DNA of 64,000 bases from Macrostomum lignano. Taxonomy: Eukaryota. The position numbers and the translations under genes were made by a program. Shown here in pieces: positions 223 through 36,397 of this stretch; within the stretch, counting starts at the first letter, position 1, and each line of letters opens with the position of its first letter. The stretch is from contig NIVC01002176.1 of the NCBI GenBank assembly GCA_002269645.1, positions 1 through 64,000 of the forward strand, read 5' to 3'. The notes under the pieces were generated by a model. It saw only the letters and a program-made list of their open reading frames with translations. It made no database searches and was not told the origin of the DNA.

Positions 223-3200
223 CTCATTGTCACAATCAACTTTCAACCGTCTGAAGCAGCCACAAGACCAGCAGGTAAAGAGCGCCACTCGTCTCTGATG
301 CTCACGCAGCAGCTCAAAATACGACCGCCTCCACAGCCCGACCGCTTTGTCACGCATTTCATTGACGCGGCTACTGAACCTGGCAATGAGCAGGTACAGC
401 ATCACGATGTTTACCAGGCTGAGAAAGACACAAACACGAGTAGATTTTGAAACCAGGAGAGCCCGATCGCGTTGGCAACTGATCCTACAGACTGGTCGAG
501 GCCGCTACGCGGTGTGTCGAAGTTGATCTGGTCAAATTTTGTAAACAGCAGGTCAAGTGGCAGGGTGAATATCTGTAGAATCACTCGCCACCAGTAGGTG
601 TTCGCACTGAGCTCACTCTGCACTGACGTAGTCACAGGAAACAACAAGTTGACGTAGAAAACTCCGAATGAGTAAAAAATAATTCCAACGATGCTTAGAA
701 AAGGCAGAAAGTCTTTCAGAACAACGCACTTCATCATAGCGATCATGGGTCCTACTGTCGACGAAAAGTTCAAGAAAGCAATTAGCCGAAGTCCAAACAA
801 CAGACATGAGGCCGACATTGTGGCTTGACAAGCGTACACGGTGATATCAGTGGGCCTGAGAAAGATGCACCACTTCCAAATTATTCCCAACCAGAGTAGA
901 ATAAGAGCACACCAGTCTATCAAGTTAGAGAAGTCTCTGCAGTACGGCGGACAGCTTCCAAGTCTTCTTGGTCTGGCGCTGGTCCCGCATCTGCGGCAGG
1001 TGTGAGGCATCAAAGCCATGACAACATCGATCACTTGTAGAATTAGGAAGAACGAAGCAAAGGCTGTTAAAATCGCGTCAATTGTCCATGAGTTAAAAGT
1101 CCGCGCAAAGTCAGTTGTGTACCACGAAAAGTAAAGTAGGAACACTGCATGGATGGCTAGACGCGCATAAAACAACATTGCTAGTCCGAAGCTATAAATC
1201 CAGGAGCTGGAACTTGTTCCTTGGCCTCGCCTTTCATAACACGAAGATCGCCATTCATCATTGGCCATCCTATGAAGACAATCTGTTGCTAGGAGCTCGT
1301 CGCAGTCGGCCTCCTCAATCAGATCCATGATGGTGACACTCGTAGCCGCGTGGTAAATTTCACAAGTACTACAGTTCGCTCCAGGAAAACGAGGCCCACC
1401 AGCTTGAGCTTGGTCGTCACAAATGTTGCCCCGGATGTACCGGAATAGCATCTGTTTCTCGCTCCAGCTAGCATTTTCAAACAGATGGTGGACGACAACG
1501 ACGAGAACTCTTATTACTCTTTTATATAGGTTTTCAAGTTGCTCACATCCGCTGCAAGTCTCACCCCGCTGATTTTGCAGCTGTATGATCAGACGCAGGC
1601 ATGCAGGAATCAGGTCAAACTGTCTCGTGATGACAAGATCTGGTAGAAGCTCGAACTTGCCAGCTTTCAGGGCGATATCAACTATTTGAAGCTCCGACTG
1701 CGAATTTGTTTGCTGACAGCCTGGAAGCAGATTTGATCGACTTTGCTCAACCAGATAGTCGAGGAACTTTGTTTCCGCATCTGGACTAATAAGATTTAGT
1801 CTGAGTGCACTTCTGAAAGCCACAGAAGAGTCTAGGTACCAAGCTTGGCGAAATGCGTCTGCAAAAAGCATCTGTTGTTTTGATACCACAAGAGGCTGCT
1901 GCTCCAGAGTGGAAACCGTTGATCCATTGTCTGCCACAGACAGCACATGACATGCGCTGTCATAGTCAGGTAGCTCTAGCGACCATCGGATTGGGTCAAT
2001 AAAACGAAGCGCGTCAACTACGCGGATTTCGAGAGCCTCTAAAAGGCTTTCTAGCTTGCCGGCTTCAACTGCATAGTCAATGCAAGTGAGCCCTGCGCTG
2101 TCTAAATCTGTAATTCTTAGCCGCTTCTTCAAAAGAAAGTCAATGTTGTTCTTGTGAGCAGCTTGACAAGCAAAGTGTAGGCAGGTGGCGCCGAGTCTGG
2201 GGCCTTTCAGGACCTGCTCTCTTACAAGTTTGTACGACTTTGTGTTCAACTGGGTCTTGAATACGTTAACAATGTTCTCTAGAGAATACCTGCCAGAGTA
2301 GAAATGAAGAATATGAAAACCTGACGAGTTGTAAGCGTTCAAGTTTAGTGACACTTTGACATGCTTTGAAGCCGATGATAGCACGGCTTTAAGAGCATCT
2401 TCATTCAGGCGACTGCACTGAAGCCAGTTTTGTCCCAGAATGTTCTCAGCTCTCTGATCGATGCCAAAGTTGTTGATCAGCTTTTGGACAGCGGCATTGA
2501 AATTCTTGATTGACTCGCTATTTCCACTGCCGAGCATGACAGCATGAAGTAGGCTGTTTCCTTCCAAGTCACAAATTCGAAAGTCCTTCTTAGGTGCATC
2601 AGTAGCGAGAAGAAACTCGAAATTCCAGCCCATGCATGCGTAAAACAGCATGTTCTGCCGAATCGGTCCTGCTTGCTTGAGTACCAGTTGATGTCGCTTG
2701 TTTCTTTGAGAAAGTCCATAACGCCTTTGTCCTGCGCAGCAAAATGTATCGGTGTCTGGCCGTCGTTATTGGCATCTTCTGTATTTTCTCAGCGAAATTT
2801 TCAACTGGCGTCATGACCATCCGTCTGGTAATTTTCATGAAAGTCCTGGGCTTCCCATACAGCCCAGTGTAATGCAGAACCGTGTTACCGGACTTATCGG
2901 GTCTAAACAGTTCCAGTGAGACTATGTCAGCCATTTGTTCTGCTGCGCTGTCAGGCAGGTACTTAATGATAGCCTGCATCACTGACTGACCGTTGGCATT
3001 CTTCCAATTCAAGCACTTTTGTCCCCAACATGCCAGAGCCACTGAATTGAAAAAGCTGTCATGCTGTTTCCCTGAATATGCATCCAAATGAACGTGCTGG
3101 TTCCTAGCTGCATAGTGAGCGAGAGTGTCGCCCTCGTCATCAACCAGATTTTTAGGAGCACCGAGTTCATCAGATTCCAATGCATGATTTAGAAAAGTCT

Positions 3201-3756
3201 TGGCGGTCTCTACACTGCAGTGCTCCATGGCTATGTGAAGCACGGTCTGTTTTTTGCTATTCTTCCACAGCATAAATCCTCTTGTGACAGGCCAGTTGGT
3301 CCGCTGGTTGCCGTCTGATGCTCGTAAAATTTCTAGAATGACCTCCTTGTGGCTGCAGTTCCGAGCGGCACAATGGGCCAGTGTGTTTCCGTATTTGTCT
3401 CTGAGCCGGTAGCTGCATAAAAAACGAAGCACGTTCGGCCAGAGTTGCTTGAGTTGCTCGAGCGAGTAGCTTGCGGTGGCGTAATGAAGCGGAGTTGCTT
3501 TGTGTTCATCTTCCATGTCAAGACAAGAAAGTCCTGCACTGCGAGACAGTTCCTCGAGCAAACGGAAGCCTCCTGGTTTCATGGCGGCAAAGTGAGCCGC
3601 AGTTCGACCCTCATCGTCTCTTTCCAAACTGAAGGCCTGCTGAATGTGCTTGATGGCAACTTCGAAATTGCCTCGTTTGGCTTCAACAAGCAGGCTTCCT
3701 TTGATCTTCTCATTCTGTAACTGCGCTGCTGCAGGCGCACCGACTGCAGTCGTCAT
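223..3756 (-). CDS. Ankyrin-repeat TRP cation channel with TRPM-type transmembrane/TRP domain; frame broken by three -1 indels (~2785, ~2653, ~425); probably continues beyond a splice donor at 222
   Basis: ORFs 2599-3765, 2477-2719 (extended upstream), 411-2651 and 172-405 join into one protein if one base is restored at each break. About 14-15 ankyrin motifs (DDEGRTAAHFAA, DKYGNTLAHCAA, NNDGQTPIHFAA, GATCLHFAC), six hydrophobic helices, S4-S5 linker LRLIAF..VGPMIAMM, S5 KDFLPF..FGVFYVNLLFP, S6/TRP helix VNIVMLYLLIARFS..WRRSYFELLREH. GAG|GTACGT donor at 223/222. Confidence 0.8.
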
Positions 3757-3996
3757 ATTGATCAAATGGTACTCAGGACAATGCAGTTGTAGGACCAGCG
3801 CAGCCTGCGATTCAAGTGATGTTTTTATTCCGTGAGTAAATCAGAGTGGCTTAGGAATCGCACTTGGTTAAAATGCGCGCACAAGGTACATAATCCACTG
3901 AAACGGTATTTACAAAACTCGTGCTTTCAGTAGCGAACTTTTAAAACATTGGCAGCTAAACTACCGTGGCTTACGCAGAGTAAGGGGCACCACGGT

Positions 3997-6900
3997 CCAC
4001 TAAAAGACGGGGGCGCCCACTAAGAGACAGGGGCGGCCACTAAGAGACAGCAGCGCCCACTAAGAGACAGGGGCGGCCACTAAGAGACAGAGGGACCCAC
4101 TATTAAGAGACAGGGGGACCCACTATTAAGAGACAGGGGGACCCACTATTAAGAGACAGGGGGACCCACTATTAAGAGACAGGGGGACCCACTATTAAGA
4201 GACAGGGGGACCCACTATTAAGAGACAGGAGTGCCCATACACCAAGGGACAGGGGCACCCACTAAGAGACAGGGGCGCCCACTAAGAGACAGCGGCGCCC
4301 ACTAAGAGACAGGGGCGGCCACTAAGAGACAGGGGCGCCCACTAAGAGGCAGGGGCGCCCACTAAGAGACAGCGGCGCCCACTAAGAGACAGGGGCGGCC
4401 ACTAAGAGACAGGGGCGCCCACTAAGAGACAGGGGCGGCCACTAAGAGACAGGGGCGCCCACTAAGAGACAGGGGCGCCCACTAAGAGACAGGGGCGCCC
4501 ACTAAGAGACAGGGGCGGCAACTAAGAGACAGGGGCGCCCACTAAGAGACAGGGGCGCCCACTAAGAGACAGGGGCGCCCACTAAGAGACAGGGGCGCCC
4601 ACTAAGAGACAGGGGCGCCCACTAAGAGGCAGGGGCGCCCACTAAGAGACAGCGGCGCCCACTAAGAGACAGGGGCGGCCACCAAGAGACAGGGGCGGCC
4701 ACTAAGAGACAGGGGCGCCCACTAAGAGACAGGGGCGCCCACTAAGAGACAGGGGCGGCCACTAAGAGACAGGGGCGGCCACTAAGAGACAGGGGCGCCC
4801 ACTAAGAGACAGGGGCGGCCACTAAGAGACAGGGGCGCCCACTAAGAGACAGGGGCGGCCACTAAGAGACAGGGGCGCCCACTAAGAGACAGGGGCGCCC
4901 ACTAAGAGACAGGGGCGGCCACTAAGAGACAGGGGCGCCCACTAAGAGGCAGGGGCGCCCACTAAGAGACAGCGGCGCCCACTAAGAGACAGGGGCGGCC
5001 ACCAAGAGACAGGGGCGGCCACTAAGAGACAGGGGCGCCCACTAAGAGACAGGGGCGGCCACTAAGAGACAGGGGCGGCCACCAAGAGACAGGGGCGCCC
5101 ACTAAGAGACAGGGGCGGCCACTAAGAGACAGGGGCGCCCACTAAGAGACAGGGGACCCACTATTAAGAGACAGGAGTGCCCATACACCAAGGGACAGAG
5201 GTGCCCACTACTAAGAGACAGGGGCGCCCACTAAGAGACAGCGGCGCCCACTAAGAGACAGGGGCGCCCACTAAGAGACAGGGGAGCCCACTAAGAGGCA
5301 GGGGCGCCCACTAAGAGATAGGGGCGCCCACTAAGAGATAGGGGCGGCCACCAAGAGACAGGGGCGGCCACTAAGAGACAGGGGCGGCCACTAAGAGACA
5401 GGGGCGCCCACTAAGAGACAGGGGCGCCCACTAAGAGACAGCGGCGCCCACTAAGAGACAGGGGCGGCCACTAAGAGACAGGGGCGCCCACTAAGAGACA
5501 GGGGCGCCCACTAAGAGGCAGGGGCGCCCACTAAGAGACAGCGGCGCCCACTAAGAGACAGGGGCGGCCACCAAGAGACAGGGGCGGCCACTAAGAGACA
5601 GGGGCGCCCACTAAGAGACAGGGGCGCCCACTAAGAGGCAGGGGCGCCCACTAAGAGACAGCGGCGCCCACTAAGAGACAGGGGCGGCCACCAAGAGACA
5701 GGGGCGGCCACTGAGAGACAGAGGGACCCACTATTAAGAGACAGGGGGACCCACTATTAAGAGACAGGGGGACCCACTATTAAGAGACAGGAGTGCCCAT
5801 ACACCAAGGGACAGGGGCGCCCACTAAGAGACAGGGGCGGCCACTAAGAGACAGGGGCGCCCACTAAGAGACAGGGGCGCCCACTAAGAGACAGGGGCGG
5901 CCACTAAGAGACAGGGGCGCCCACTAAGAGACAGCGGCGCCCACTAAGAGACAGGGGCGGCCACCAAGAGACAGGGGCGGCCACTAAGAGACAGGGGCGC
6001 CCACTAAGAGACAGCGGCGCCCACTAAGAGACAGCGGCGCCCACTAAGAGACAGGGGACCCACTATTAAGAGACAGGGGGACCCACTATTAAGAGACAGG
6101 AGTGCCCATACACCAAGGGACAGGGGCGCCCACTACTAAGAGACAGGGGCGCCCACTAAGAGACAGGGGCGGCCACTAAGAGACAGGGGCGCCCACTAAG
6201 AGACAGCGGCGCCCACTAAGAGACAGGGGCGCCCACTAAGAGACAGGGGCGCCCACTAAGAGACAGGGGCGCCCACTAAGAGACAGGGGAGGCCACTAAG
6301 AGACAGGGGCGCCCACTAAGAGACAGGGGCGCCCACTGAGAGACAGAGGGACCCACTATTAAGAGACAGGGGCGCCCACTAAGAGACAGGGGCGCCCACT
6401 AAGAGACAGGGGCGGCCACTAAGAGACAGGGGCGGCCACTAAGAGACAGGGGCGGCCACTAAGAGACAGGGGCGGCCACTAAGAGACAGCGGCGCCCACT
6501 AAGAGACAGGGGCGGCCACTAAGAGACAGGGGCGCCCACTAAGAGGCAGGGGCGCCCACTAAGAGACAGCGGCGCCCACTAAGAGACAGGGGCGGCCACT
6601 AAGAGACAGGGGCGCCCACTAAGAGACAGGGGCGCCCACTAAGAGACAGGGGCGGCCACTAAGAGACAGGGGCGGCCACTAAGAGACAGGGGCGGCCACT
6701 AAGAGACAGGGGCGCCCACTAAGAGACAGGGGCGCCCACTAAGAGACAGGGGACCCACTATTAAGAGACAGGGGACCCACTATTAAGAGACAGGGGGACC
6801 CACTATTAAGAGACAGGGGGACCCACTATTAAGAGACAGGAGTGCCCATACACCAAGGGACAGGGGCGCCCACTAAGAGACAGGGGCGCCCACTAAGAGA

Positions 6901-7497
6901 CAGCGGCGCCCACTAAGAGACAGGGGCGGCCACTAAGAGACAGGGGCGCCCACTAAGAGGCAGGGGCGCCCACTAAGAGACAGCGGCGCCCACTAAGAGA
7001 CAGGGGCGGCCACTAAGAGACAGGGGCGCCCACTAAGAGACAGGGGCGCCCACTAAGAGACAGCGGCGCCCACTAAGAGACAGGGGACCCACTATTAAGA
7101 GACAGGGGGACCCACTATTAAGAGACAGGAGTGCCCATACACCAAGGGACAGGGGCGCCCACTACTAAGAGACAGGGGCGCCCACTAAGAGACAGCGGCG
7201 CCCACTAAGAGACAGGGGCGCCCACTAAGAGACAGGGGCGCCCACTAAGAGACAGCGGCGCCCACTAAGAGACAGCGGCGCCCACTGAGAGACAGAGGGA
7301 CCCACTATTAAGAGACAGGGGGACCCACTATTAAGAGACAGGGGGACTCACTATTAAGAGACAGGGGGACCCACTATTAAGAGACAGGGGACCCACTATT
7401 AAGAGACAGGGGGACCCCCTATTAAGAGACAGGAGTGCCCATGCACCAACAAGGGACAGGGTCGCCCACCAATAGACAGCAGGGCGCCCACCAAGAC
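3997..7497. repeat. ~3.5-kb satellite of a 20-bp unit CACTAAGAGACAGGGGCG(C/G)C (~170 units) with recurring variant blocks
   Basis: Direct tandem repetition; 23-bp CACTATTAAGAGACAGGGGGACC variants and an AGGAGTGCCCATACACCAAGGGAC insert recur several times. Confidence 0.98.
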
Positions 7498-9197: not shown

Positions 9198-9748
9198 TCT
9201 GGATGAAGCTGTGAGGCTGAGTTTGTCTGGATGAAGCTGTGAAACTGAGTGAGTCTGGATGAAGCTGCAAAGCTGAATGGGTCTGGATGAAGCCAAATGT
9301 GAAGCTGAGTGGGTCTGGATGAAGCTAGATGTGAAGCTGAGTGGGTCTGGATGAAGCTAGATGTGAAGCTGAGTGGGTCTGGATGAAGCTAGATGTGAAG
9401 CTGAGTGGGTCTGGATGAAGCTAGATGTGAAGCTGAGTGGGTCTGGATGAAGCTAGATGTGAAGCTGAGTGGGTCTGGATGAAGCTAGATGTGAAGCTGA
9501 GTGGGTCTGGATGAAGCTGCGAAGCTGAGTGGGTCTGGATGAAGCTGCGAAGCTGAGTGGGTCTGGATGAAGCTGCGAAGCTGAGTGGGTCTGGATGAAG
9601 CTATATGTGAAGCTGAGTGGGTCTGGATGAAGCTGTAAAGCTGAGTGGGTCTGGATGAAGCTGCGAAGCTGAGTGGGTCTGGATGAAGATATATGTGAAG
9701 CTGAGTTGGTCTGGATGAAGCTGTAAAGCTGAGCGGGTCTGGATGCTG
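9198..9748. repeat. Minisatellite with 32-bp and 28-bp units (GTCTGGATGAAGCT[AGATGT/GC]GAAGCTGAGTGG)
   Basis: Direct tandem repeats visible in the sequence. Confidence 0.95.
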
Positions 9749-12195: not shown

Positions 12196-15100
12196 GTGCA
12201 CTGGAGCTGCACGGAGCTCTCCACCAGGAAGCAAATCGACAAAGTCAAAAGGCTAAGCAATTGGTGCTGCAAAGAATGTAGAGAGGACGAAGCCAAGCAA
12301 CAGAAGAGAACCGTGAGCCCCCCACCCGAAGCTAGCACTAGAGCTCCGATCAACCACCAGCTCAGGAAGCTTAGGATCGGAGTCTGGAACTGCGACCACT
12401 TCAGAGCGAAGGCTCCGGAAATGGAAGACTTCATCGAGCGACAGAACATCGACGTGCTCCTTCTTCAAGAGACCAAGCTGAGGGCCGAGGACGGCGATGT
12501 CGAGCTGGCTGGCTTCACGGCCATACGTAAAGATCGCAGTAGACGGATATGCAGAGACAAGGCGCGGGGCGGAGGACTACTCACCTTCGTCAAACACGGC
12601 GTGCAGTTCAAGGAATTGACCACAGCATCGCACGAAGAAGACTGCGGAATCGAGCTACAGTGCATCAGGGTCTACCTGGCCGGCCCCAGCCAGCCGACGC
12701 ACGTCAACATAGCGAACCTGTACCTCCCGCCACACAACACCATCCAAATCAGCAAGGAGGACATCATGAGGATCCCGGGCGGTCCTGATTGGATAGTTGC
12801 CGGAGACTGGAATGCGCACCACTCGATGTGGGACAATCTAGTGGCGGAGGATAACAGAGGCGTAGCGGTGATGGAGTGGGCGGACCTCCACGAGATGTCG
12901 GTGCTTAACGACGGAAGTTGCACTAGGAGCAGCAAGGACGGCAGGTTCCACTCGAGTCCGGACGTCGCCTTCTGCCATACCCTGGACGAGGCATGGGAGT
13001 GGCAGGCTACCAGCGCCCTCAGCTCCGACCACAAACCGGTGCTAATCACTAGCAGAGGAGACTGCACCGATAAAGCTAAATCGAGGAAACTCGTCAGCTG
13101 GAATTGGAAGAATGCTGATTGGACGGCATTCCGGGAAGAAATCCGGACAAGCATTGCCGAGGGCGGAGAAGAGCTGCGGGTGATATCGACCAGCATAGCT
13201 GAGAGAAGGTTACGGGACATCATCACGAATGCCGCCAGAAAAGCGATCGGCGTGGTTGTTAGGAGGACCAGGAACCGGGACTGCCTCACCGAAGACATTA
13301 GGGCGGACCTGGTGGAGAGAGACGCCATTAGGACGGAGAAAGGAGAGTCGTCTGAGGAGTGGAAAGAAGCAGAAGCGGCCATCTCCGAGAAGATTAAAGA
13401 GCACAAAAGGCAGGCCTGGAGGCAGCACCTCGCCACGAATGCGACCAACGCGAAGATGTGGACGGTCCTTAAGCAACTCAAAGGCACCCTAGCCAAGACG
13501 GAAAGCCAAGGGCTGACTCACCAAGGCCGCACATACATATCGGCGAGAGCCAAAGCCAACATCTTCGCGAAGACCTACGCGAAGGTCAGCGATGTGAGAA
13601 TTGAGAAAAGCCACCGCTGGGCCCGCCGCGACGTCAACGCCCGCCTAAGAGAGAGCAACATCTCGCCAGACCCGGAAGATTGCCAACCGCTCACGCTGAA
13701 CGAGCTCCAGGACGCTCTCCATGATATGAATGCCAACAAAGCTGCCGGGATGGACCACATCCACCCCAGGCTCCTCCGGGAACTGCCAACCGAAGCGCTA
13801 GAGGCCGTCCTGCAGCTGTTCAACAGGCTATTCGCTGAAGGATCCGCGCCACAAAATTGGCGCACGGCTAGGATCATCCCCCTGCTCAAGGGAGGGAAAC
13901 CAAAGCAGGAAATCGGATCCTACAGGCCCGTGAGCCTAACATCCTGTCTAAGCAAGTGGATGGAGCGCATCATAGTCCGAAGAATCACCCACAAGCTGGA
14001 AAGTGCCGGGAGACTCAGCGATTGCCAGGCGGGCTTCCGTGCGGGCAGGTCAGCTGAAGACCAGCTCTTGAGGTTGACTCAAGCCATCGAGGACGCCTTC
14101 AAGAGGGGAGACATTACGCTGCTCACGCTGTTTGATTTCGAACGTGCCTTTGATAAGGTGTGGCGTGACGCCCTCCTAATCAAGATGCTAGACAAGGGTG
14201 TGGGGCCGCGGATTGTCCGTTGGATCCAAGGATGGCTAACGAACCGCCTGGCCTGTGTCAACGTTGAGGGAACCGATGGTCGGCGAGAGCAGTTCAAACA
14301 GGGGCTTCCCCAAGGCTCGGCCCTGTCGCCCATCCTCTTCGTGATTTTCGTGGACGACCTTCTCAACAGCCTGAGCAAGCTCCCCGGAGTGGAAGTCAGC
14401 GGATTTGCAGACGACCTGGCCACCTGGTCATGCGCTACACGAGCTGAGGAGGCGACGAACATGCAACAGGCGGCAGCGAACGTCGTGAGCGAATGGAGCC
14501 GGAAATGGCTGCTCCCAGCCGCTGCGGCTAAGTGCACCACCACCCTCTTTACGCAAGGAAAGCCCAGCGAACCGAGCCGGTCCGTACGATTCAACAATGA
14601 CGACCTCCGATGGGACCCGAACCCCAAGTTCCTGGGTCTCACGTACGACCGGAGCCTCCGTTTCACCCAACACGTTGCTAACGTCATCGAGGCGTGTCGC
14701 AGCAGGGTGAACCTCATGCGCAGGCTCGCAGGCAGCGACTGGGGGTGGGAAAGCAACCTACTCCGGCAGACGCATACCGCCCTCATCCGCAGCCGCATCC
14801 TCTACGGGGCCTGCGCGTGGACGCCCTGGCTCAGCGAGGAAAGCTGGCGGCGGCTCGAAGTCCTAGATAGAACGGCAGCTCGAATAGTGAGCGGTCTAGT
14901 CCAAACTACACCGCTAGACGCCCTGAAAGCCGAGAGTGATATTGGACCCCTAAGAACGACGTGCGAGATCCGTTGGGCGGCGAAGCTCGACCGATGGCTC
15001 CGCCTCAATGAGGAATCGGCCAGGTACAAAATGACCAGGAATGAGGAAGCTCGCCGACAGCGAGGTGGCAGCACTAGACGCGACTGGAGATCGGCGGCTG

Positions 15101-16160
15101 GGGAGCTACTGGCCAGGTTCAAGTTAGACGAGGTCGCCAGGACTGGAGATGGGCATCCTCTACCCCCCTGGAAGAAGGGCAACGCGAAGGACTTCCACGC
15201 TGATGCCTGCCGGGCGCCGAGCCAGGAGGAAAACCTGTCGCTGGCCCACCAGCTTCTGCGCACCGAAGGACCGCCCCCGGATGTGGTCATCTTCTCTGAC
15301 GGATCCGTGTCGGACGGTTGCGGCGGAGGAGGAGCCATCATTGTGAAGCCAGAACCAGGCGACCCAGGATGCAGAGGAGAGATACTTGCTGAAATGACAC
15401 GGCCGGCTGGTCGCCCGTGTTCCTCACTCCAAGCCGAGCTCAGAGCGATGGAAGGCGCTCTGAACCTCCTAGAGCACCTCAGAGTGGAGAAGAGGAGAGT
15501 CTGGGTGATCACGGATAGCAAAAGCAGTCTGCAGGCGCTCCGCGGGCACTCAAGGAACCCGATAGCTGTGGAAATTCAAGCCCTGGCCGCCCGCCTCCGC
15601 GAGGGCGGAGTCACCTTCGAGTGGAGATGGGTGCCCGCGCATTGTGGCCTCTGGGGCAACGAGGAGGCTGACCGTCTGGCAGGAGCAGCCGTTCGCTCTC
15701 AGCAGGAGGACACCCCGGTCCTCGCCAGCGTGGTTGTGAAGCAGCTAGCTCGGGAGCTGAAGGCCAGTGAGACGCGCTCGCACCAGCGCTCCCGCGATAC
15801 TTACGGCACCAGAGGACCGGCCAAACACCCCTGTTACGGCAGCAGAGAGGAGGCGACCAGCTTCATGAGAATGAGAACCGGTCACTCACTCGAGCTCGGA
15901 GCCTATTGCAAGCGTATAAAGAAGGTGGAGAACGGCCACTGCAGGATGTGCCGCGGCGAGGAGGAAACCGTGTCCCACATAGTCCAATGCCCGGCAACTT
16001 TCCGTCAGAGAAGTGAGTGGGACGTGATGGCGCTGAACGACCTAAACCGTTCCAGCGAAGGCGTCCTCAAGTTCTGGCGGTGGTATAGGAGTCACCCACC
16101 ACTGGAGCAGCCCTCACCGTTGGTAGCGTGAGTAGCAACAACAACAACAACAACAGCAGC
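12190..16160 (+). mobile_element. Non-LTR retrotransposon A (I/Ingi-like): single ORF 12196-16131 with partial PHD, AP endonuclease, RT, RNase H and CCHC; 5'-truncated; (CAA)6 tail
   Basis: 1311-aa uninterrupted ORF: HWSC..WCCKEC (PHD remnant); VWNC, LQETKL, GDWNAH, SDH (APE); YRPVSLTS, DFERAFD, QGS, FADD (RT); FSDGS, QAEL, TDSKS, WVPAHCG..GNEEADRLA (RNase H); CRMC..H..C. Confidence 0.95.
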
Positions 16161-17021: not shown

Positions 17022-19390
17022 AGACCCACGACCCACCTCCATGAGGTGTCTCTGGATCATTCTAAAGGACCGTACAACCACCGAGTCTGCGAGGAAGCTG
17101 GAAATAACGCGTCACCTGACAGCGCCACCGACAACCTTCGAACCGTCATGCGCCTCCGCGGAGGAAACGACGACGCCCAAAAAGCGCATCGCTGCCGGAG
17201 TCGTGGGAGGCGCCGAGAAGCCACAGCATCGCACAGAGCCGAGCTGGGCCCAGAACTCCTGGTGCAGTTTAACTGCAACGGCATTAAAAGCCGCCAAATG
17301 GAGTTACCTCACAGGTTCACTCTCCTAACGCCCTGCCGTGGCCCTCCTTCAGGAAACAAAGCTAAGGCATAACGAAGAGTACAATCCACCAAGAGGGTAT
17401 GTAAAAGCTGCCAGAGCGGACGGCGCCGCCCTGGACAGGCCTAAAACCGGCGCTAACGTCACTGACACTGCCGACCAGCCTACTCCACCTCTGCCCGATC
17501 CCCCCGCTGGCACTGCCGGGAAACTGCGCCGCGTCAAGAACCCACGCTGCCGCCTCAGATACCCCGGCCTCCGTGCGGAATGGTGCCCCGGATGCCGCAG
17601 CGGCCGCACCGCATGCAGCGTCCGTTTCACGCCATGAACCAACTCCCACCAGCCGGCCCAACCCGGAGCGAGCCCTACCAGCACGGCGCCTGCTAGTCAG
17701 CCCCAACCAATCCAAAAAACCGAAAAAAAGAATCACGGGGCGTGGCGGTGCATTGGTACTCGTTCGGGAAGACGTCCAATACGATAGGTTATCGATCAAC
17801 CGCGAGCAAGAACTCCTGGATGTCGTCGCCTGCCGCATCCGCCTACAAGGACAACAGCCAACTGTGGTGGCCTCCATTTACGCCCCACCCACCAGTTACC
17901 AACGCCCTGACGATACCTGGCAGCCAACCTTTAACAATCTACCGGTCACCGGAAGAGCCATCCTCGGGGGTGATTTCAACGCCCACGGCAGCTGGAAACA
18001 TCACCTCGACGAGGACGCCAGGAGCCAAACGGTTGATGAATGGGTTGCTCGCAACTGTCTGACCATCTGCAACTCAACCAACCACACGAGAGCGTGCCCC
18101 AGCACAGGTCGCATCAGCAGTCCGGATGTGACGATCTGCAGCAGCGCCCTCTCCGGCGTTTTGACCGACTCCTGGAGAATAGGCCCCGACTGGAGAACAA
18201 CCTGCCAGGGACAGAAACACTGGATCTACAAAAAAGCAAACTGGGCCGTCTTCCGGGATATTTTGACTGGCTGGGTCGACTCCGATCTACAAACGGTCGC
18301 GCTTAACGATGAGGCTACTCGGCTCTCCGAGGCTATACTCTCAGCCGCGCGACACAGCATCCCGCGCAGCTCAGTAAAGCCAATGCGCCAGTTCCCTTTC
18401 TGGAACGACGCATGCGAGGATGCCACGAAAGCGACCAAAGCCGCTTGCCAGGCCGTCGAAGCAGATCCGACCCCGGAGAATCTTGCCGCAGCCGCTCGGG
18501 CCCGACATAATGCCTCAGACTGCCTCAACAAGGAAAAGAAAGCCTTCCTGCTGGAAAGGGCGGCGCACTTCCACCAAGGCCCCGACATCTTTGGCCTACC
18601 CTGCGCCATGAGAGGCGAAGGGCACAAGACTGCGGACCCCGCAGCGATTACTAGAGCCGCCTGATTTAGACTTGAAGGTCATTGAGTCAGACCTCTGAAA
18701 ATGCCCGAGCGTACGGCCCGCACTAACAAGGAAAAGGCAGAGCTTTTCTGCCAGATGTACGCGGAAGTGAGCCGAGTCCCCAGACGCCGCCAGGACACCG
18801 CAATCCGCTACGAAGCCAACGAGGCCACGACAGTCACAGACGAACCCCCGCTCACGGCCCGGATGCCCTCTTCTCTATCGACGAGCTCCGCGCAGCCGTT
18901 CGTCGCCTCAAGTCAGGAAAGTCTGTGGGGGCCGACGGCGTCTCAAACAAGATTCTGAAACGCCTCCCCGCGGCCGATGAGAATATTCTCCTCAAACTCA
19001 TCAACCGCACCTGGACCGAAGGGCAAACACCGACCAGCTGGCGAAATGGCATCATCATCCCGATCCGAAAAAAGACAAGAGTGCTACGTCGCCGTCCGGT
19101 CGCTTTGACCAGCTGTGTCGCTAAGTGCGCAGAGTGCATGGTGCTTGCCCGCCTTACTTGCAACGGCCCGCTCCCTGGCTACCTGCTCCGAGGAGCTCCA
19201 ACCTGCTCTGGACGCAGTGACCAGCTGGTGCAGGACCTGGAAGGTCACCACTAGCAACAGCAAATGCTGCTATACCACTTTCACTCTGGCCCCAAATGAG
19301 AACAACGGAAAGAGCCAGGTGAACCTTTGCATTAATGGAGATAAAATCATTTTTGAGCTCACGCCGACCTTTTTGGGGCTCACGTTGGAC
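17022..19390 (+). mobile_element. Decayed non-LTR retrotransposon C (APE + partial RT), frameshifted, RT core deleted, 3' end lost
   Basis: LVQFNCNG, LLQETKL, GRGGALVLV, ASIYAPP, GGDFNAH, SSPDVT (APE); GADGVSNKILK, WRNGIIIPI, RPVALTS (RT N-part), jumping near 19170 to LQPALDAVTSW..TFLGLTLD. Confidence 0.85.
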
Positions 19391-30812: not shown

Positions 30813-33800
30813 TCACTCGGCAGCAGCAGCAGAAACCTCAGCTTCCACAGCTTCATCGTCAGGTTTCTGGCCGCCAACGCCGAGGCACTCCGACAGCAGG
30901 TTAATCATCTCGCTAGACTTCAAGGAGGTTCCTCCCGATGGCGCGGAGCCGGCGGTCGCGGCAGCTGCAGTGGTGGCGCTCGCAGTTGAAGCCGTCTCGG
31001 CATCCACCGCGGCAGTGGCGGCATCGTCGGGCTCCTCAGCGGCGGAGGTCAGGCCGCTGCGCCGGCGTTTCTTGATCGGCGAGGCGACCAGCGGCTCGCG
31101 CTTCACCGCCGCTGCTGCCCGCCTGCGCTTCCGGCCGCCGCCACCGTCTCCGTTGGCGTCGCCGCCGACTTCGGCATCGCCGGCGTCCTCTTCCAGGTCG
31201 GCCGCTTCGCTGCCGTTGCCGCTGACGCTGCCGGCTTTGCCGCTCCCGCCGCCGCCGCCGCCGCCTAGAGCAGCGTCATCCGACACGACGTCCTTCTCTA
31301 GCCGGAGCTTCTCGCAGGCGATCCGATGCACGCCGACTTCAACGGAGTCCGCCGACAGCAGGCGGATGACTCGAACTGGGCGCTCCTGGCCGAGTCGGTG
31401 GCAGCGGTCCTCCGCCTGCTTGTCGTTGTACGGATTGAAGTCAATGTCGTGGATGATGACGGTGTCGGCTGCCGTGAGGTTGATGCCTGCATCGGGGGCA
31501 AGGGACGCATTAATTATATCACGATTCTCAGGCATGCCCACCTGTGCCCTGCAGACAAGCGCTTCTCTCCAACACTGTCCCCACCCACGTAAAATTGCAC
31601 GCGCTGGCAGTATGAAAAGTGCAATAGTGCACAGACAGAGAGACACGAGTGCCGAGACAGAACAGCGAAGCAAAATCAAACACCGCAGCTTTACGGTCTG
31701 TTCTTTTACAGAAATATTTGTTGGCGCAGAAATGGCCAGACAGACTCCGAACTGAACTGGAATGACTTTTTGGCCTGGGTTCGCTGTGACCTCTATTTGG
31801 AACTGAAATGCGCAGAACCGCATCAGTTCAGACTGACGAGATGCGAGCGCTATGGGCTGGCAATTCTGCTATCGTATGAAGGTTATGAAAATATGGATAG
31901 ACTAGTCAGCAGTCAGCTAAACTTTTAGCTCCTACCGTGTTGCCTAACCATATTCTGTAGCTTTTCTGACGTCAGGAATATTCGTTTTTAAAGCCACAGA
32001 CGGCCCTATACTGGAGCCATAGACTACTATCTTATACTGAAGCCATAGACTACTACCCTGAACCTTATACTGAAGCCATAGACTACTACCCTGAACCCTA
32101 TACTGAAGCCATAGACTACCATGTACTGAAGCCATAGACTACCCTATACTGAAGCCATAGACTACCATGTACTGAAGCCATAGACTACCCTATACTGAAG
32201 CCATAGACTACCCTATACTGAAGCCATAGACTACCCTATACTGAAGCCATAAGCTACCCTATACTGAAGCCATAAACTACCCTATACCGAAGCCATAAGC
32301 TACCCTATACTAAAGCCATAGGCTACCCTATACTGAAGCCATAGACTACCCTATACTGAAGCCATAGACTACCCTATACTGAAGCCTAGACTACCCTATA
32401 CTGAAGCCATAAGCTACCCTATACTGAAGCCATAGACTACCCTATACTGAAGCTGTAGACTACTCTATAGTAAAGATATCTTTCTAACCTCTAATGAAAT
32501 ATAATTCTATACATTTTGGCTAATAAACAAGTCACCTTGCGCAGACCAACTGGCAACGCGCTAAAATATTTTCCCTAATTTGGTACTGGATTTTGGGGCC
32601 ACTTCCTGTGCAATTCTTCTATTCAGGCCTCAGAAGAAGGCAAACACATCCGGGGCAGTTAAGATTGATGGCGGCGGGTTTTGGCAGTTAATATACTAAG
32701 TAAGCTATTTTGCAATAAACCAAGGAGAAGCACAGCATATAAACCCCGAGGGCTCTGATAGGTAAATCAATTAATCTTCATATCCTGTTCATTTTACGCT
32801 CAGATTAACTTTATTAATAATCAAACCGGACTAAAGGGCGCCAGAGACTGCTGAGCTGCGGCTCCTGCGGTAGAGGCAAGCAGGATCACAGACACATGCA
32901 TGGTGAGGCGTAGACATACACAACCAGACAAAAATACTGACACTCAGACAGGTACACATACTCAGACAGACAGATAGACACTCAGACAGACAGATACAGA
33001 CACTCAGACAGACATATACAGACAACCAGACAGATACAGACACCCAGACAGACAGATACAGACACTCAGACAGACAGATACAGACAGACAGATACAGATA
33101 GACAGACAGACAGACAGACAGGTACAGACAGACATGGTACAGAAACTCAGACAACTCACCCAGCCCGCCAGCCCGGGTGCTGAGCAGGAACACGGGGATG
33201 CTGGAGTCCTCAGCAAACCTGTCCAGCAGCGCTTGCCGTTCGCCCACAGGCGTGGAACCGTCAACGCGCAGAAATCGAATTGCGCGCAGCTGCAGGTAGG
33301 CCTGCACAATGTCCAGCATCATGACAAACTGGCTAAACAGAGCCACACGATGTCCGGCAGCTGTGAGCTCTGGCAGCAGGCTGTCTAGCGCTACCAGCTT
33401 GCCAGACAGCAGCAGGTGCTCAGCCTCATCAAGCTGGTGCTCAGCCAGCACTGGGTACATCTGGCAGGTCCTGTGCAGCTCGAAGTCATTCATCGCGGCC
33501 AGATCTTCGTAGATGTAGTCCTCGTTGGCGCGCAGATGGCCGGGGTCCTTCAGCATCTTGCTGGCCATCTGGCGCAGCAGAGAGTCAGTGTACACCCGCC
33601 TGTGCAGCAGGCAGTGGTTGGCCGCCTTCCGCAGCTGCAGAATGTAGTTCACCGCCACCTCGCCGCTGCTGCCTCGCTCGCCGGCGCCTTCGAAACGTCG
33701 GCGAAGGCTGGCGACGAGTTCCTGGTACTCGTGGCGCTGGCGCTCCGTCATTGGGACCAGCATGACCTCCTCGGTCTTGGCCGGCAGCTGCGTGAGCACC

Positions 33801-36397
33801 TGGGCTTTGGTGCGGCGCAGAAAGAAGGGCCGCATCAGGCGCTTAGCGTGCTGGATCCGCTCCATCTCGTAGGTGGTCCGGTCAGCTGCCGCCGCTGGCA
33901 TGGCGGAGCCCGCAGACGACTCATCCGTGGTGGCCGAGCGCTGGGGTGGGACCGCAAATGACCATATTCTGATTCTCCCATTCTGATTCTCCCATTCTGA
34001 TTCTCCAATTCTGATTCTCCTATTCTGATTCTCCCATTCTGATTCTCCCATTCTGATTCTCCTATTCTGATTCTCCTATGTAGATTCTCCCATTCTCAGC
34101 TCCGATTCTGATTCCCCCATTGTCAGATCCCATTCTAATTCTCCGAGCTCCCATTGCGCCAGTACCTGAGCTCCAATCTCAAGCCACACAGCAGACTCAC
34201 CGAGAAGAGGTTGAACATCTTCTTGAGCAGGTCAGCGCACTGCCTAGACGCACTGAAGACATCCGGAATGACAAAGGACAGCAGAGACATCAGCTCAACC
34301 AGGTTGTTCTGCAGCGGGGTGCCGGTGAGCAGAATGCGCCGCTTCACCCGAAAGTTCATCAGCATTTTGTAGCGCCTCGACTGGCAATTCTTCAGCATGT
34401 GCGCCTCATCGAATATGCCGTACTCAAAGTCCAGGTTCTTCATCATGGCCCGGTCCTCCAGGGTGCCGGTGGCGATGTTGTACCTGCCAATTAAATTGGG
34501 GAGGATAGAGGCTCCGTACACATTCACCTGAAGGTTGTGACACAGGTTTGAAGGGCATCTGAAGGTTGTGACACAGGTTTGAAGGGCATCTGAAGGTTGT
34601 GACACAGGTTTGAAGGCACTCTGAAGGTTGTGACACAGGTTTGAAGGCACTCTGAAGGTTGTGACACAGGTTTGAAGGCACTCTGAAGGTTGTGACACAG
34701 GTTTGAAGGCACTCTGAAGGTTGTGACACAGGTTTGAAGGCACTCTGAAGGTTGTGACACAGGTTTGAAGGCACTCTGAAGGTTGTGACACAGGTTTGAA
34801 GGCACTCTGAAGGTTGTGACACAGGTTTGAAGGCACTCTGAAGGTTGTGGCACAGGTTTGGAGGCACTCTGAAGGTTGTGACACAGGTTTGAAGGCACTC
34901 TGAAGGTTGTGACACAGGTTTGAAGGCACTCTGAAGGTTGTGAAACAGGTCTGAAGGAAGCCTGAAGGCTGTGACACGGGTTTGAAGGCACTCTGAAGGT
35001 TGTGGCACAGGTTTGAAGGCACTCTGAAGGTTGTGAAACAGGTCTGAAGGAAGCCTGAAGGCTGTGACACGGGTTTGAAGGCACTCTGAAGGTTGTGACA
35101 CAGGTTTGAAGGCACTCTGAAGGTTGTGACACAGGTTTGAAGGCACTCTGAAGGTTGTGGCACAGGTTTGGAGGCACTCTGAAGGTTGTGACACAGGTTT
35201 GAAGGCACTCTGAAGGTTGTGACACAGGTTTGGAGGCACTCTGAAGGTTGTGGCACAGGTTTGGAGGCACTCTGAAGGTTGTGGCACAGGTTTGAAGGCA
35301 CTCTGAAGGTTGTGACACAGGTTTGAAGGCACTCTGAAGGTTGTGACACAGGTTTGAAGGCACTCTGAAGGTTGTGACACAGGTTTGAAGGCACTCTGAA
35401 GGTTGTGACACAGGTTTGAAGGCACTCTGAAGGTTGTGACACAGGTTTGAAGGCACTCTGAAGGTTGTGACACGGGTTTGAAGGCACTCTGAAGGTTGTG
35501 ACACAGGTTTGAAGGCACTCTGAAGGTTGTGACACAGGTTTGAAGGCACTCTGAAGGTTGTGGCACAGGTTTGGAGTGACCCTGAAGATTGTAATACATG
35601 TACGTGAAACTTGGAAAAAAATATGCCCTGAAAACACCCAACATAATCTAAACGGTTTAAGTTGTCCCTCAAAAAAAACTCCACTGCAACCCTATGACTA
35701 ATCCTGTCTACCAGCCGATCGCTAAGCAGAAAAAGTACACGCAAAGAAACAACCCTAGATTCAACACTATAGAAAAGTTCGTCTGGCTTGCTGATTTTAT
35801 AGCGTCAGAGCAGAAATTGGGAATTTTACAGAAGAGTGAAGCCAGAAAGGAAACTCTAAGAGGAGCGCAGAGGCATGAAAAATTGAGGATCTGCAGAACG
35901 GAAAGGGGTTGCTGGGATCTGGGGCCTGGGTCTGAAAATTAGACTTCACAGCAAAATGGCTGTAAATAAGTGAAGGGGGGGGGCTGAGGCGGGCATCAGA
36001 GACAGAGATTCAATAGAAGATTCTGCGGGAGATGGTAAATGGCTTTTCTAGCCTCAAGGCAACTGGCTAGCAAATTTAATAAATAGGCAGAGCTGGAGAG
36101 ACTGGCATCGGAGTCCTTGGGGATTTTTGAAGGCTTCGATGGGGGAGAGAAGGGGATTAGGGAAGAATTGAAGATCAGACGGATGGAGTCGTGTTTACTC
36201 ACTAGCTGCACTTTTATCCACTTAGATAGGGACTGCAGGGAGCCAATGACAGCTAGGCGGGACACAGGCAGACACAGGGAAATGGGAAATGTATAGGAAA
36301 AGAGACAGGCAGACAACCAGACAGACAAAAGACACTATGGCAGACATACAGACAGAAAGACAGACAGACAGACAGACAGAGAGACAGACAGACAGAC

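What the first reader, a model, noticed from the sequence alone, without database searches (positions are those of the whole stretch)
223..3756. TRP channel combining a long TRPA-like ankyrin array with a TRPM-type pore domain
Seen: about 14-15 ankyrin repeats run straight into a segment (TIMDLIEEADCDELLATDCLHRMANDEW) resembling the TRPM pre-S1 helix. S5, S6 and the TRP helix match TRPM better than TRPA (FGV..LL.P; W..LL..FL.LVNI..L.LLIA.FS; W....F.L.RE). Established: vertebrate TRPMs have MHR domains and no ankyrins, TRPA1 has a long ankyrin array, and the schistosome praziquantel target TRPM_PZQ has ankyrins inside its MHR. No MHR1/2 is visible here, and the usually conserved S6 NLLIAM reads YLLIAR. 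Inference: a divergent or chimeric ankyrin-TRPM subfamily with an unusual lower gate, encoded mostly in one ~3.5-kb exon.
Basis: partly seen in the sequence, partly recalled or inferred. Interest (0 to 1): 0.75.

Follow-up and report, generated by a model that had tools for sequence, protein, structure and literature searches.

The report
Flatworm ankyrin-repeat TRPM-like channel gene
This is a Macrostomum lignano (free-living flatworm) ion-channel gene that joins about 15 ankyrin repeats to a TRPM-type pore without the usual melastatin/SLOG domain; that design is already known from the schistosome meclonazepam target TRPM_MCLZ, and the copy in this window carries three frameshifts.

Summary
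On the minus strand, window 3756-223 is one 3.5-kb exon. It encodes about 15 ankyrin repeats, a helical linker, S1-S6 and a TRP helix. The reading frame is broken three times. The C-terminal exon(s) lie beyond the window.

The organism is Macrostomum lignano; an intact copy, BOX15_Mlig030667g2, is 98% identical. The channel half matches only TRPM by sequence and by predicted fold. It does not match TRPA, TRPC, TRPN or TRPV. No SLOG/MHR1-2 domain is found in the protein, in its paralogues, or in the 60 kb upstream.

The gene belongs to a large Macrostomum-only expansion. That expansion is related to a pan-flatworm clade which I identify as the TRPM_MCLZ orthologues. TRPM_MCLZ (Smp_333650) is the schistosome meclonazepam target. 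It was described in 2023-2026 as a 'TRPM-like' channel with N-terminal ankyrin repeats and no SLOG. The architecture is therefore not unprecedented.

Undescribed in the papers I could search:
- the Macrostomum subclade itself;
- its long ankyrin arrays;
- its altered pore filter (Gly to Thr);
- in this gene alone, Tyr replacing the otherwise invariant S6 Asn.

I could not decide whether the window copy is a pseudogene or carries assembly indels. Deep placement relative to TRPM and TRPS is also unresolved.

The parts
223..3756 (-). Coding part of exon 1 (1178 codons after mending three indels): ankyrin array, linker, S1-S6 and TRP helix. The remaining ~88 C-terminal residues (GWWNNEHQYPLEYL...) are encoded beyond the window start.
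   Evidence: 98% identical to P0001, BOX15_Mlig030667g2.
3757..3806 (-). AG acceptor (3806-3805) and 48-nt 5' leader (3804-3757). The database model P0002 starts exactly at 3804 (AALVLQLHCPEYHLIN-M).
   Evidence: Whether this is a cis- or a trans-splice acceptor is inference.
2019..3699 (-). Ankyrin-repeat solenoid, about 15 helix-pair repeats (residues 20-580).
   Evidence: Pfam Ank families. AF2 pLDDT 80. Foldseek best matches are ankyrin-1, AnkB, NOMPC and dTRPA1.
2781..2782 (-). Frameshift 1: one base (G in the intact copy) is missing between these positions (codon 326).
2655..2656 (-). Frameshift 2: one base (G) is missing between these positions (codon 368).
1185..1841 (-). Helical linker (MHR4-like) and pre-S1. 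It includes the RQFDLIP motif and, at 1251-1334, TIMDLIEEADCDELLATDCLHRMANDEW.
   Evidence: hhalign on the region upstream of S1: tier-1 vs tier-2 E 2.8e-8; tier-2 vs TRPM MHR4 E 5.5e-18. Foldseek alignments to TRPM span ~600 of 627 residues.
765..1184 (-). S1-S4 voltage-sensor-like domain. S2 carries Q..D and S3 carries N..D at the positions of the TRPM4 Ca2+ site (E828, Q831, N865, D868).
   Evidence: AF2; alignment columns; coordinates.
382..752 (-). Pore domain: S5, pore helix with filter LFTKFD (Thr in place of the TRPM filter Gly), and S6 with LYLLIAR. The Tyr codon is at 394-396.
431..432 (-). Frameshift 3: 2-nt TG insertion inside S6 (codon 1109).
265..381 (-). TRP helix (GLWRRSYFELLREH). 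The Pro-Pro of TRP box 2 is lost (T, C).

Best explanation
Window 3756-223 (minus strand) is exon 1 of one homeologous or paralogous copy of the Macrostomum lignano gene Mlig030667. The gene belongs to a Macrostomum-specific expansion of ankyrin-bearing, SLOG-less 'TRPM-like' cation channels. The closest described relative of that expansion is the flatworm TRPM_MCLZ clade.

Shown:
- The protein has about 15 canonical ankyrin repeats where TRPM has MHR1-3.
- It has an MHR4-like helical linker with pre-S1.
- It has a TRPM-type S1-S6 and a TRP helix with the conserved Trp.
- In the intact copy it has a short C-terminal helix.

Inferred, by analogy with TRPM_MCLZ, which is a functional homomeric Ca2+-permeable non-selective channel in HEK cells:
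- Intact family members assemble as tetramers and conduct cations.
- The ankyrin solenoid serves as the cytosolic regulatory or tethering module in place of the nucleotide-binding SLOG domain.
- A cation (Ca2+) site may persist in S2/S3, because the E/Q..D and N..D residues are retained.

This particular gene is a derived member. Its filter Gly is replaced by Thr (as in 8 of 14 subclade members). Its otherwise invariant S6 Asn is replaced by Tyr. Its TRP box 2 Pro-Pro is lost and its coiled coil is truncated. Its gating or permeation is therefore probably altered, or it is only a modulatory subunit.

The copy in the window additionally carries three frame-breaking indels. As it reads, it cannot make a channel. 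It is either a recently disabled duplicate or a mis-assembled intact gene.
For: Identity and organism: P0001 (M. lignano) is 98% identical over 100% of the query. The syntenic DNA is 98.9% identical.

TRPM-type channel half:
- Only TRPM hits in the PDB for the TM region, for the family profile and for the S6-TRP fragment. The NOMPC control hits TRPC and TRPM alike.
- The family profile scores about 50 bits against TRPM and 6.8 bits against TRPC5.
- The AF2 model has pLDDT 82 and pTM 0.79. The top 50 Foldseek PDB hits are all TRPM, with about 600 aligned columns.

No SLOG: Pfam and tblastn over the window, with a positive control.

Family structure:
- The exhaustive HMMER search gives 30 representatives with E<=1e-30. 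All of those I looked up are M. lignano.
- The second tier comes from trematodes, cestodes, a monogenean and M. lignano.
- After that come proteins named TRPM.
- NJ bootstrap support: tier-1 98.5%, tier-2 97.5%, the two together 63.5%.
- Linker homology: tier-1 to tier-2 E 2.8e-8; tier-2 to TRPM MHR4 E 5.5e-18. One tier-2 protein passes the Pfam PF25508 'TRPM2-like domain' cut-off.

Tier-2 is TRPM_MCLZ:
- The S2 Glu to S4 Arg spacing of 75 residues equals E868 to R943.
- The filter-Tyr to TRP-helix-Tyr spacing of 79 residues equals Y1038 to Y1117.
- The residue at the S4 base is Tyr in Paragonimus and Phe in cestodes, as published.
- The terminal exon / TM domain is duplicated in the Opisthorchis models, as in the publication.
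- It was previously labelled 'TRPM7'.
- It has ankyrin repeats and no SLOG.

Function of TRPM_MCLZ.

Derived residues in this gene.
Against: - The deep branching is unresolved. Backbone NJ supports are below 0.5, and only TRPC5 was available as an outgroup.
- Monophyly of tier-1 with tier-2 has only 63.5% bootstrap support.
- The direct profile comparison of the tier-1 linker with TRPM MHR4 is not significant (E 0.04). The link rests on transitivity through tier-2.
- The AF2 alignment contained TRPM sequences, so the fold match is not fully independent.
- I never held the Smp_333650 sequence itself. Equating tier-2 with TRPM_MCLZ rests on published residue numbers and features.
- No expression or functional data exist for any Macrostomum member.
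- pN/pS between the window copy and the intact copy is 0.41, and the three frameshifts leave function of this gene in doubt.
Confidence: 0.8

Rival explanations
1. The window copy is a real, recently inactivated duplicate (pseudogene) of Mlig030667.
For: - Three independent frame-breaking indels lie in 3.5 kb.
- At ten amino-acid positions the two other copies (P0001, P0002) agree against the window.
- pN/pS is 0.41 overall.
- A 3.9-kb LINE ORF elsewhere in the window is uninterrupted. That would be unlikely if the assembly had ~0.85 indel errors per kb.
- From my own knowledge: M. lignano carries recent genome duplication, so redundant copies are expected.
Against: - There is no in-frame stop apart from those caused by the shifts.
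- Indel density in the exon (3 in 3534 nt) is well below that in the flanking non-coding DNA (2 in ~370 nt). This means constraint lasted until very recently.
- Two of the three indels are single-base losses, typical of uncorrected long-read assemblies.
Confidence: 0.5
2. The window copy is an intact, expressed gene and the three indels are assembly errors.
For: - All lesions are 1-2 nt.
- The mended frame is open for 1178 codons.
- The TM half shows pN/pS 0.26.
- Intact near-identical copies are annotated (P0001, P0002).
Against: Same as the evidence for the pseudogene reading, above all the intact 1311-codon LINE ORF in the same window.
Confidence: 0.4
3. It is a TRPA, TRPN or TRPC channel (families that normally carry ankyrin repeats), and the TRPM resemblance is superficial.
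For: It has a long N-terminal ankyrin array. Foldseek of the N-terminal model lists NOMPC and fly TRPA1 among the best ankyrin matches.
Against: - No TRPA, TRPN, TRPC or TRPV chain appears among the listed PDB matches. These are all matches up to E=10 for the TM region and the S6-TRP fragment, and the best 60 of 73 for the family profile.
- A NOMPC fragment readily finds TRPC and TRPM.
- The family profile scores 6.8 bits against TRPC5.
- All top 50 structural matches of the channel half are TRPM.
- The TRP-box Trp is present, and as far as I recall TRPA1 lacks it.
- The ankyrin matches are generic: ankyrin-1, AnkB and DARPins rank as high or higher.
Confidence: 0.03
4. It is a canonical TRPM whose MHR1/2 (SLOG) exons lie upstream and were missed.
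For: Only 60 kb upstream could be inspected. Small exons are hard to see.
Against: - tblastn with ten TRPM N-termini finds nothing better than E 0.1 in the window, apart from one ankyrin-to-ankyrin match. The TM control gives E 1e-14.
- The annotated intact copy starts at the same Met.
- P0002 starts at an AG acceptor 48 nt upstream, with an in-frame stop further up.
- None of the paralogues I scanned with Pfam has SLOG.
- The ankyrin array occupies the N-terminus.
Confidence: 0.02
5. The flatworm ankyrin-TRPM-like channels are not a derived TRPM offshoot. They are a relic of the ankyrin-bearing stem of TRPM/TRPS from before the SLOG fusion.
For: - The NJ backbone is unresolved.
- TRPM MHR3/4 are said to contain degenerate ankyrin repeats.
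- Other group-1 TRP families carry ankyrin repeats.
Against: - The family was found only in flatworms among 1.84 billion representatives.
- In the NJ tree it sits among SLOG-bearing TRPM lineages rather than next to the TRPC root.
- Tier-2 keeps a clear TRPM MHR4 segment.
Confidence: 0.08

Closest known systems
TRPM_MCLZ (Schistosoma mansoni Smp_333650) and its parasitic-flatworm orthologues, the 'TRPM-like' group (PMC10788528, PMC11731825, PMC12861061)
   Same: - N-terminal ankyrin repeats and no SLOG/MHR1-2.
- An MHR4-like linker with the RQFD(I/L)(I/L)P motif.
- A TRPM-type S1-S6, TRP helix and C-terminal helix.
- Few exons.
- Restricted to flatworms.
- The linker profiles are homologous (E 2.8e-8), and the two groups form one NJ clade (63.5%).
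   Different: - The window gene is not an orthologue. It lies in a separate, fast-evolving Macrostomum-only subclade. Mean Scoredist between the subclades is 2.0, against 1.1 within each.
- Its ankyrin array is longer: about 15 repeats here, and the much longer arrays in some paralogues (not counted) suggest more.
- Its filter is LFT(N/K)FD rather than the Gly-containing or FEVS types.
- In this gene the S6 Asn is Tyr and TRP box 2 is lost.
- At the positions of the published meclonazepam-pocket residues I read, by eye from the alignment, Ala for H946 and His for Y1117. No drug sensitivity can be inferred.
Canonical TRPM channels (e.g. TRPM2, TRPM4, TRPM8)
   Same: - Best and only PDB sequence matches and best structural matches.
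- The S3 N..D and S2 acidic/amide residues of the Ca2+ site are retained.
- The TRP-box Trp is present.
- The pre-S1/MHR4 segment is in the same register.
   Different: - No SLOG/MHR1-2 and no recognisable MHR3.
- Canonical ankyrin repeats instead.
- No Nudix or kinase domain.
- Identity is only ~15-19% in the channel half.
TRPA1 and TRPN/NOMPC (long-ankyrin TRP channels)
   Same: A long N-terminal ankyrin solenoid directly precedes the channel. The ankyrin model matches NOMPC and fly TRPA1 arrays structurally.
   Different: The transmembrane and TRP regions show no detectable sequence match to TRPA1 or NOMPC in the PDB at E<=10. The ankyrin similarity is generic.
TRPS (ced-11-like, TRP soromelastatin; PMC7306681)
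   Same: A divergent relative of TRPM with a TRPM-like channel core.
   Different: TRPS has SLOG and Nudix domains and no ankyrin repeats. The putative TRPS-like molluscan sequences in my set have SLOG and form a separate 100% clade.

Membership tests
TRPM sensu stricto | N-terminal melastatin homology region with SLOG (MHR1/2; Pfam LSDAT_euk) | tested here: not met
   No LSDAT_euk hit in the window ORFs, in P0001, or in paralogues. The positive controls P0057, P0078 and P0102 do hit it. tblastn finds no SLOG exon in the window.
TRPM sensu stricto | TRPM-type S1-S6 and TRP helix (closest by sequence and by fold) | tested here: met
   with the control.
TRPM sensu stricto | MHR4/pre-S1 helical region homologous to TRPM | tested here: inconclusive
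   Direct hhalign gives E 0.04 in the correct register. It is significant only by transitivity: tier-1 to tier-2 2.8e-8, tier-2 to TRPM 5.5e-18. Foldseek alignments cover this region, but the AF2 alignment included TRPMs.
TRPM sensu stricto | Phylogenetic position inside the TRPM clade | tested here: inconclusive
   The NJ/Scoredist tree rooted on TRPC5 places the flatworm clade among TRPM lineages, but backbone support is below 0.5.
TRPM-like / TRPM_MCLZ group | N-terminal ankyrin repeats replacing SLOG, followed by a TRPM-like channel | tested here: met
   (ankyrin repeats). (channel). Definition.
TRPM-like / TRPM_MCLZ group | Groups with TRPM_MCLZ orthologues to the exclusion of other TRPMs | tested here: inconclusive
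   The joint clade has 63.5% bootstrap support. The linker profile match has E 2.8e-8. Smp_333650 itself was not available. Tier-2 was equated with TRPM_MCLZ through published residue spacing, the S4 residue by taxon, and the duplicated exon.
TRPM-like / TRPM_MCLZ group | Orthology to Smp_333650 (one-to-one) | tested here: not met
   The window gene sits in the Macrostomum-only tier-1 clade (98.5%). The parasite orthologues sit in tier-2 (97.5%) together with other Macrostomum genes.
TRPM-like / TRPM_MCLZ group | Functional Ca2+-permeable cation channel | not testable with these tools
   Shown only for Sm.TRPM_MCLZ. The window copy is frame-broken.
TRPA | TRPA-type transmembrane domain | tested here: not met
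   No TRPA1 chain appears among the PDB sequence hits up to E=10 or among the top 50 fold matches of the channel half.
TRPN (NOMPC) | TRPN-type transmembrane/TRP domain behind ~29 ankyrin repeats | tested here: not met
   NOMPC (5vkq) is absent. A NOMPC fragment does recover TRPC and TRPM, so the test has power. Only the ankyrin fold matches.
TRPC | TRPC-type channel core | tested here: not met
   The family profile scores 6.8 bits against TRPC5 (E 22), compared with ~50 bits against TRPM.
TRPS | SLOG and Nudix domains, no ankyrin repeats | tested here: not met
   Ankyrin repeats are present and SLOG is absent. Definition.

The most novel reading that the evidence does not exclude
The flatworm ankyrin-TRPM-like channels (TRPM_MCLZ plus the large Macrostomum expansion to which this gene belongs) could be survivors of an ankyrin-bearing stem lineage of the TRPM/TRPS superclade, rather than TRPMs that swapped SLOG for ankyrin repeats. 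This would contradict the published inference of an 'ankyrin-free, SLOG- and Nudix-linked TRPM-TRPS ancestor'. A weaker version is also open: the undescribed Macrostomum subclade, with NOMPC-length ankyrin arrays and a Gly-less filter, may be a functionally new channel type.
Probability: 0.1. Interest if true: 0.75.

Novelty: new variant of a known kind. Interest (0 to 1): 0.4.

Why it matters
TRPM_MCLZ is a validated anthelmintic target, and its odd ankyrin-for-SLOG architecture has so far been discussed only for parasites.

- A free-living, experimentally tractable flatworm carries many relatives. From the locus tags seen, about eight named loci fall in the Macrostomum-only tiers and about a dozen more in the TRPM_MCLZ-related tier, each in several near-identical copies. 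This gives a system in which to study what the ankyrin module does in a TRPM-type channel and how the family arose.
- The natural Asn-to-Tyr change at the otherwise invariant S6 position, and the Gly-to-Thr filter, are ready-made mutants for structure-function work.
- For TRP classification, reviews still describe TRPM as ankyrin-free. These genes show that this does not hold for TRPM-like channels in flatworms.
- For this specific locus the significance is lower, because the copy in the window cannot be translated as it stands.

Tried and rejected
1. A 29-nt 'intron' after CDNE (222-194) that would give a short C-terminus. Rejected, because the intact copy continues with GWWNNEHQYPLEYL..., which is encoded beyond the window.
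2. An alignment-based search of the 5.8-billion-protein set with tier-2 sequences timed out. The single-sequence rerun found only 7 proteins.
3. I used the last word-indexed search on a chimeric probe, written from memory, of TRPV1, TRPC5, TRPA1 and NOMPC fragments, hoping to fetch outgroups. The tree therefore has a single outgroup family, and TRPA, TRPV and TRPN were tested only through PDB sequence searches.
4. The NJ tree did not resolve where the flatworm clade attaches.
5. The direct profile comparison of the tier-1 linker with TRPM MHR4 was not significant.
6. Supplementary files with the Smp_333650 sequence are not held. Absolute residue numbers did not match any sequence I held, so I used spacings instead.
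7. Pfam Ion_trans does not reach significance for this protein or for P0001, although it does for paralogues.
8. I considered a TRPA-derived ankyrin array. The nearest non-family ankyrin hits are ANKRD52/PP6 subunits and ankyrin-1/AnkB, so nothing is TRPA-specific.


Full report
**What is in the sequence**

The feature lies on the minus strand. Six-frame translation of window 4000-1 and the raw sequence show the following:
- The ATG is at 3756-3754.
- An AG lies at 3806-3805, and there is an in-frame stop further upstream.
- A long reading frame continues to ...CDNE, followed by GT at 222.
- The frame changes three times.

The closest intact copy is on GenBank contig NIVC01001580.1 (assembly GCA_002269645.1, fetched as L001). 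Aligned to it, the window differs by 43 substitutions in 3.9 kb. It has a 1-nt deletion before 2781, a 1-nt deletion before 2655 and a TG insertion at 432-431.

With those three positions mended, the exon is 3534 nt (1178 codons) with no stop. It differs from the intact copy by 36 nucleotides: 15 synonymous and 21 non-synonymous. pN/pS is 0.41 overall and 0.26 in the channel half.

The intact protein (P0001, 1266 aa) continues after CDNE with about 88 residues encoded beyond the window start. The window therefore holds about 93% of the coding sequence in one exon.

**Organism and copies**

The best database match is Macrostomum lignano BOX15_Mlig030667g2, at 98% identity and full coverage. A second near-identical model (P0002) begins AALVLQLHCPEYHLIN-M. 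That is exactly the translation of the 48 nt between the AG acceptor and the ATG.

The window, P0001 and P0002 are three distinct copies. At ten positions the other two agree against the window.

**Ankyrin half**

The Pfam ankyrin families are significant. An AlphaFold2 model of residues 1-764 was built on an alignment of 20 family members. It has mean pLDDT 80 and shows about 15 consecutive helix-pair repeats between residues 20 and 580.

Its best PDB matches are long ankyrin solenoids: ankyrin-1, AnkB, DARPins, NOMPC and fly TRPA1. Nothing in these matches is specific to TRPA.

**Channel half**

- The 375-residue TM region matches only TRPM2/4/5/1/3 chains in the PDB (best E 1e-8), plus an algal TRP at 1e-3.
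- A profile of the post-ankyrin region of three paralogues raises this to 1e-12. All 60 listed hits are TRPM.
- The 87-residue S6-TRP fragment alone again finds only TRPM and noise.
- As a control, a NOMPC S6-TRP fragment of the same size finds NOMPC, then TRPC3/4/5/6 and TRPM2/4/5 at similar E-values. The test can therefore tell the families apart.
- The same profile scores 6.8 bits against TRPC5.
- An AlphaFold2 model of residues 640-1266 has pLDDT 82 and pTM 0.79. Its 50 best Foldseek PDB matches are all TRPM, aligned over about 600 columns that include the linker and the post-TRP helix.

One caveat applies to the fold result. The alignment used for folding contained TRPM sequences.

**No melastatin/SLOG domain**

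No LSDAT_euk hit occurs in the window ORFs, in P0001 or in the paralogues scanned. Canonical TRPMs in my set do hit it.

tblastn of ten TRPM N-termini against the whole window gives nothing better than E 0.1, apart from one ankyrin-to-ankyrin match. TM-domain controls hit the exon at 1e-14.

The large ORFs upstream are a LINE-type retroelement and SNF2-helicase fragments.

**The family**

An exhaustive HMMER search of 1.84 billion representatives gave only 263 hits. Thirty of them have E<=1e-30. They fall into tiers:
- Top tier: all those I looked up are M. lignano, from many different loci.
- Second tier, with ankyrin repeats, Ion_trans and no SLOG: Opisthorchis, Paragonimus, Echinostoma, Hymenolepis, Schistocephalus, Protopolystoma and further M. 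lignano loci.
- Below that: proteins named TRPM from molluscs, hemichordates and vertebrates.

I built a Scoredist/NJ tree with 200 bootstraps on 329 columns of S1 to TRP box 2. It gives tier-1 98.5%, tier-1 plus a few divergent Macrostomum genes 97.5%, tier-2 97.5%, and all of these together 63.5%. Rooted on TRPC5, this flatworm clade sits among SLOG-bearing TRPM lineages, but no backbone node exceeds 0.5.

I also compared profiles of the region upstream of S1 alone. The tier-2 linker is homologous to TRPM MHR4/pre-S1 (E 5.5e-18, 161 columns). The tier-1 linker is homologous to the tier-2 linker (E 2.8e-8). One tier-2 protein passes the Pfam cut-off for the 'TRPM2-like domain'.

**What is already known**

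Reviews state that TRPM and TRPS lack ankyrin repeats. The flatworm literature, however, describes TRPM_MCLZ (Smp_333650), the target of meclonazepam:
- It lacks MHR1/2-SLOG and has N-terminal ankyrin repeats.
- It clusters next to TRPM and is called 'TRPM-like'.
- It is encoded by three exons.
- It was earlier labelled TRPM7-like.
- It gives Ca2+ entry and a linear I-V relationship as a homomer in HEK cells.

I did not hold its sequence, but tier-2 fits it in every checkable respect:
- The S2 Glu to S4 Arg spacing is exactly 75 residues in all neodermatan members (E868 to R943).
- The filter Tyr to the second TRP-helix Tyr is 79 residues (Y1038 to Y1117).
- The residue three after the S4 Arg is Tyr in Paragonimus and Phe in cestodes, as published.
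- The Opisthorchis models contain two TM domains, matching the published duplicated terminal exon in Opisthorchiida and Paragonimus.
- A Schistocephalus member is named 'TRPM7'.

TRPM_PZQ has the canonical SLOG architecture.

**What is particular to this gene**

I compared 76 aligned sequences: 14 tier-1, 4 divergent Macrostomum genes, 14 tier-2, 32 TRPM, 7 SLOG-bearing TRPS-like and 5 TRPC5.
- The S6 Asn of NLLIA is invariant except here, where it is Tyr. The TAC codon is at 394-396 and is shared by all three copies.
- The filter Gly is Thr in 8 of 14 tier-1 members, including this one (LFTKFD).
- The Pro-Pro of TRP box 2 is lost only here.
- The C-terminal coiled coil of the paralogues is truncated.
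- The positions of the TRPM4 Ca2+ ligands are kept as Q..D in S2 (E..D/E in most paralogues) and N..D in S3. The residue numbers E828, Q831, N865 and D868 are from my own knowledge of the TRPM4 structures.

**Mechanism**

Shown: the domain order, the TRPM-type core and the absence of SLOG.

Inferred from TRPM_MCLZ and from TRPM structures:
- Intact members are tetrameric cation channels.
- An ankyrin solenoid, rather than a nucleotide-binding SLOG domain, is coupled to the gate through the MHR4-like linker and the TRP helix.
- They may have a Ca2+ site in the S1-S4 domain.

For this gene, the Tyr at the S6 Asn position, the Gly-less filter and the degraded TRP box 2 suggest altered or lost conduction. 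The copy in the window is untranslatable as it reads.

**Pseudogene or assembly error**

The two readings are close to even.
- For a real lesion: three independent indels, ten private amino-acid states, and an intact 1311-codon LINE ORF in the same window.
- For assembly error: 1-2 nt events, no other stops, and an indel density far below that of the flanking non-coding DNA.

**Verdict**

The kind is already known from TRPM_MCLZ.

The Macrostomum subclade and this gene's gate substitution are a new variant of it. None of the papers I read on TRPM evolution or TRPM_MCLZ mentions Macrostomum relatives of this group. Interest is moderate.

Noticed in passing
window 3997-7441: A 20-bp tandem repeat (consensus CCACTAAGAGACAGGGGCGC, ~167 copies, 87% matches) starts about 190 bp upstream of the channel gene's 5' acceptor. 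The syntenic region of the other copy (L001) carries the same array. A second array (period 32, ~18 copies) lies at 9198-9745.
   Followed up: partly
window 12196-16128 (+) and 17573-18661 (+): An uninterrupted 1311-codon ORF has endonuclease, reverse-transcriptase and RNase H domains (a LINE-type retroelement). A second endonuclease fragment lies nearby. The intact ORF argues against a high indel error rate in this assembly.
   Followed up: partly
window 30816-35637 (-): Several ORFs have SNF2-related and helicase C-terminal domains, probably exons of one SNF2-family helicase gene. Between 34135 and 35744 all three minus-strand frames are open for 400-500 codons, which is odd.
   Followed up: no
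whole window: G+C swings between 0.31 and 0.63 in 2-kb windows, with strong AT skew (0.68) at 4001-6000. The skew there is explained by the satellite; the low-GC blocks at 22-26 kb and 44-48 kb were not examined.
   Followed up: no
L001 18960-21365 (contig NIVC01001580.1): In the other copy of the locus, an 802-aa ankyrin-repeat gene lies about 4.7 kb downstream of the channel gene, on the same strand. The corresponding region lies outside the window.
   Followed up: no
P0102 (Clonorchis sinensis KAG5447154.1, 1708 aa): This flatworm TRPM is named 'TRPM2'. It has a significant Ank_2 hit (residues 63-119) in front of a normal SLOG domain, a TRPM2-like domain and a channel. It is an ankyrin-plus-SLOG arrangement that could be an intermediate architecture. 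Whether it is the TRPM_PZQ orthologue was not checked.
   Followed up: partly
P0047 / P0182 (Opisthorchis viverrini): These gene models contain two complete TM domains in tandem. They most likely read through the duplicated alternative terminal exons 3a/3b reported for TRPM_MCLZ in Opisthorchiida.
   Followed up: partly
P0002 (M. lignano, UniRef A0A1I8...): This near-identical copy lacks residues ~862-968 (S1-S3) through an in-frame gap, with no GT-AG at the corresponding window positions. It is probably a gene-model or transcript artefact.
   Followed up: no
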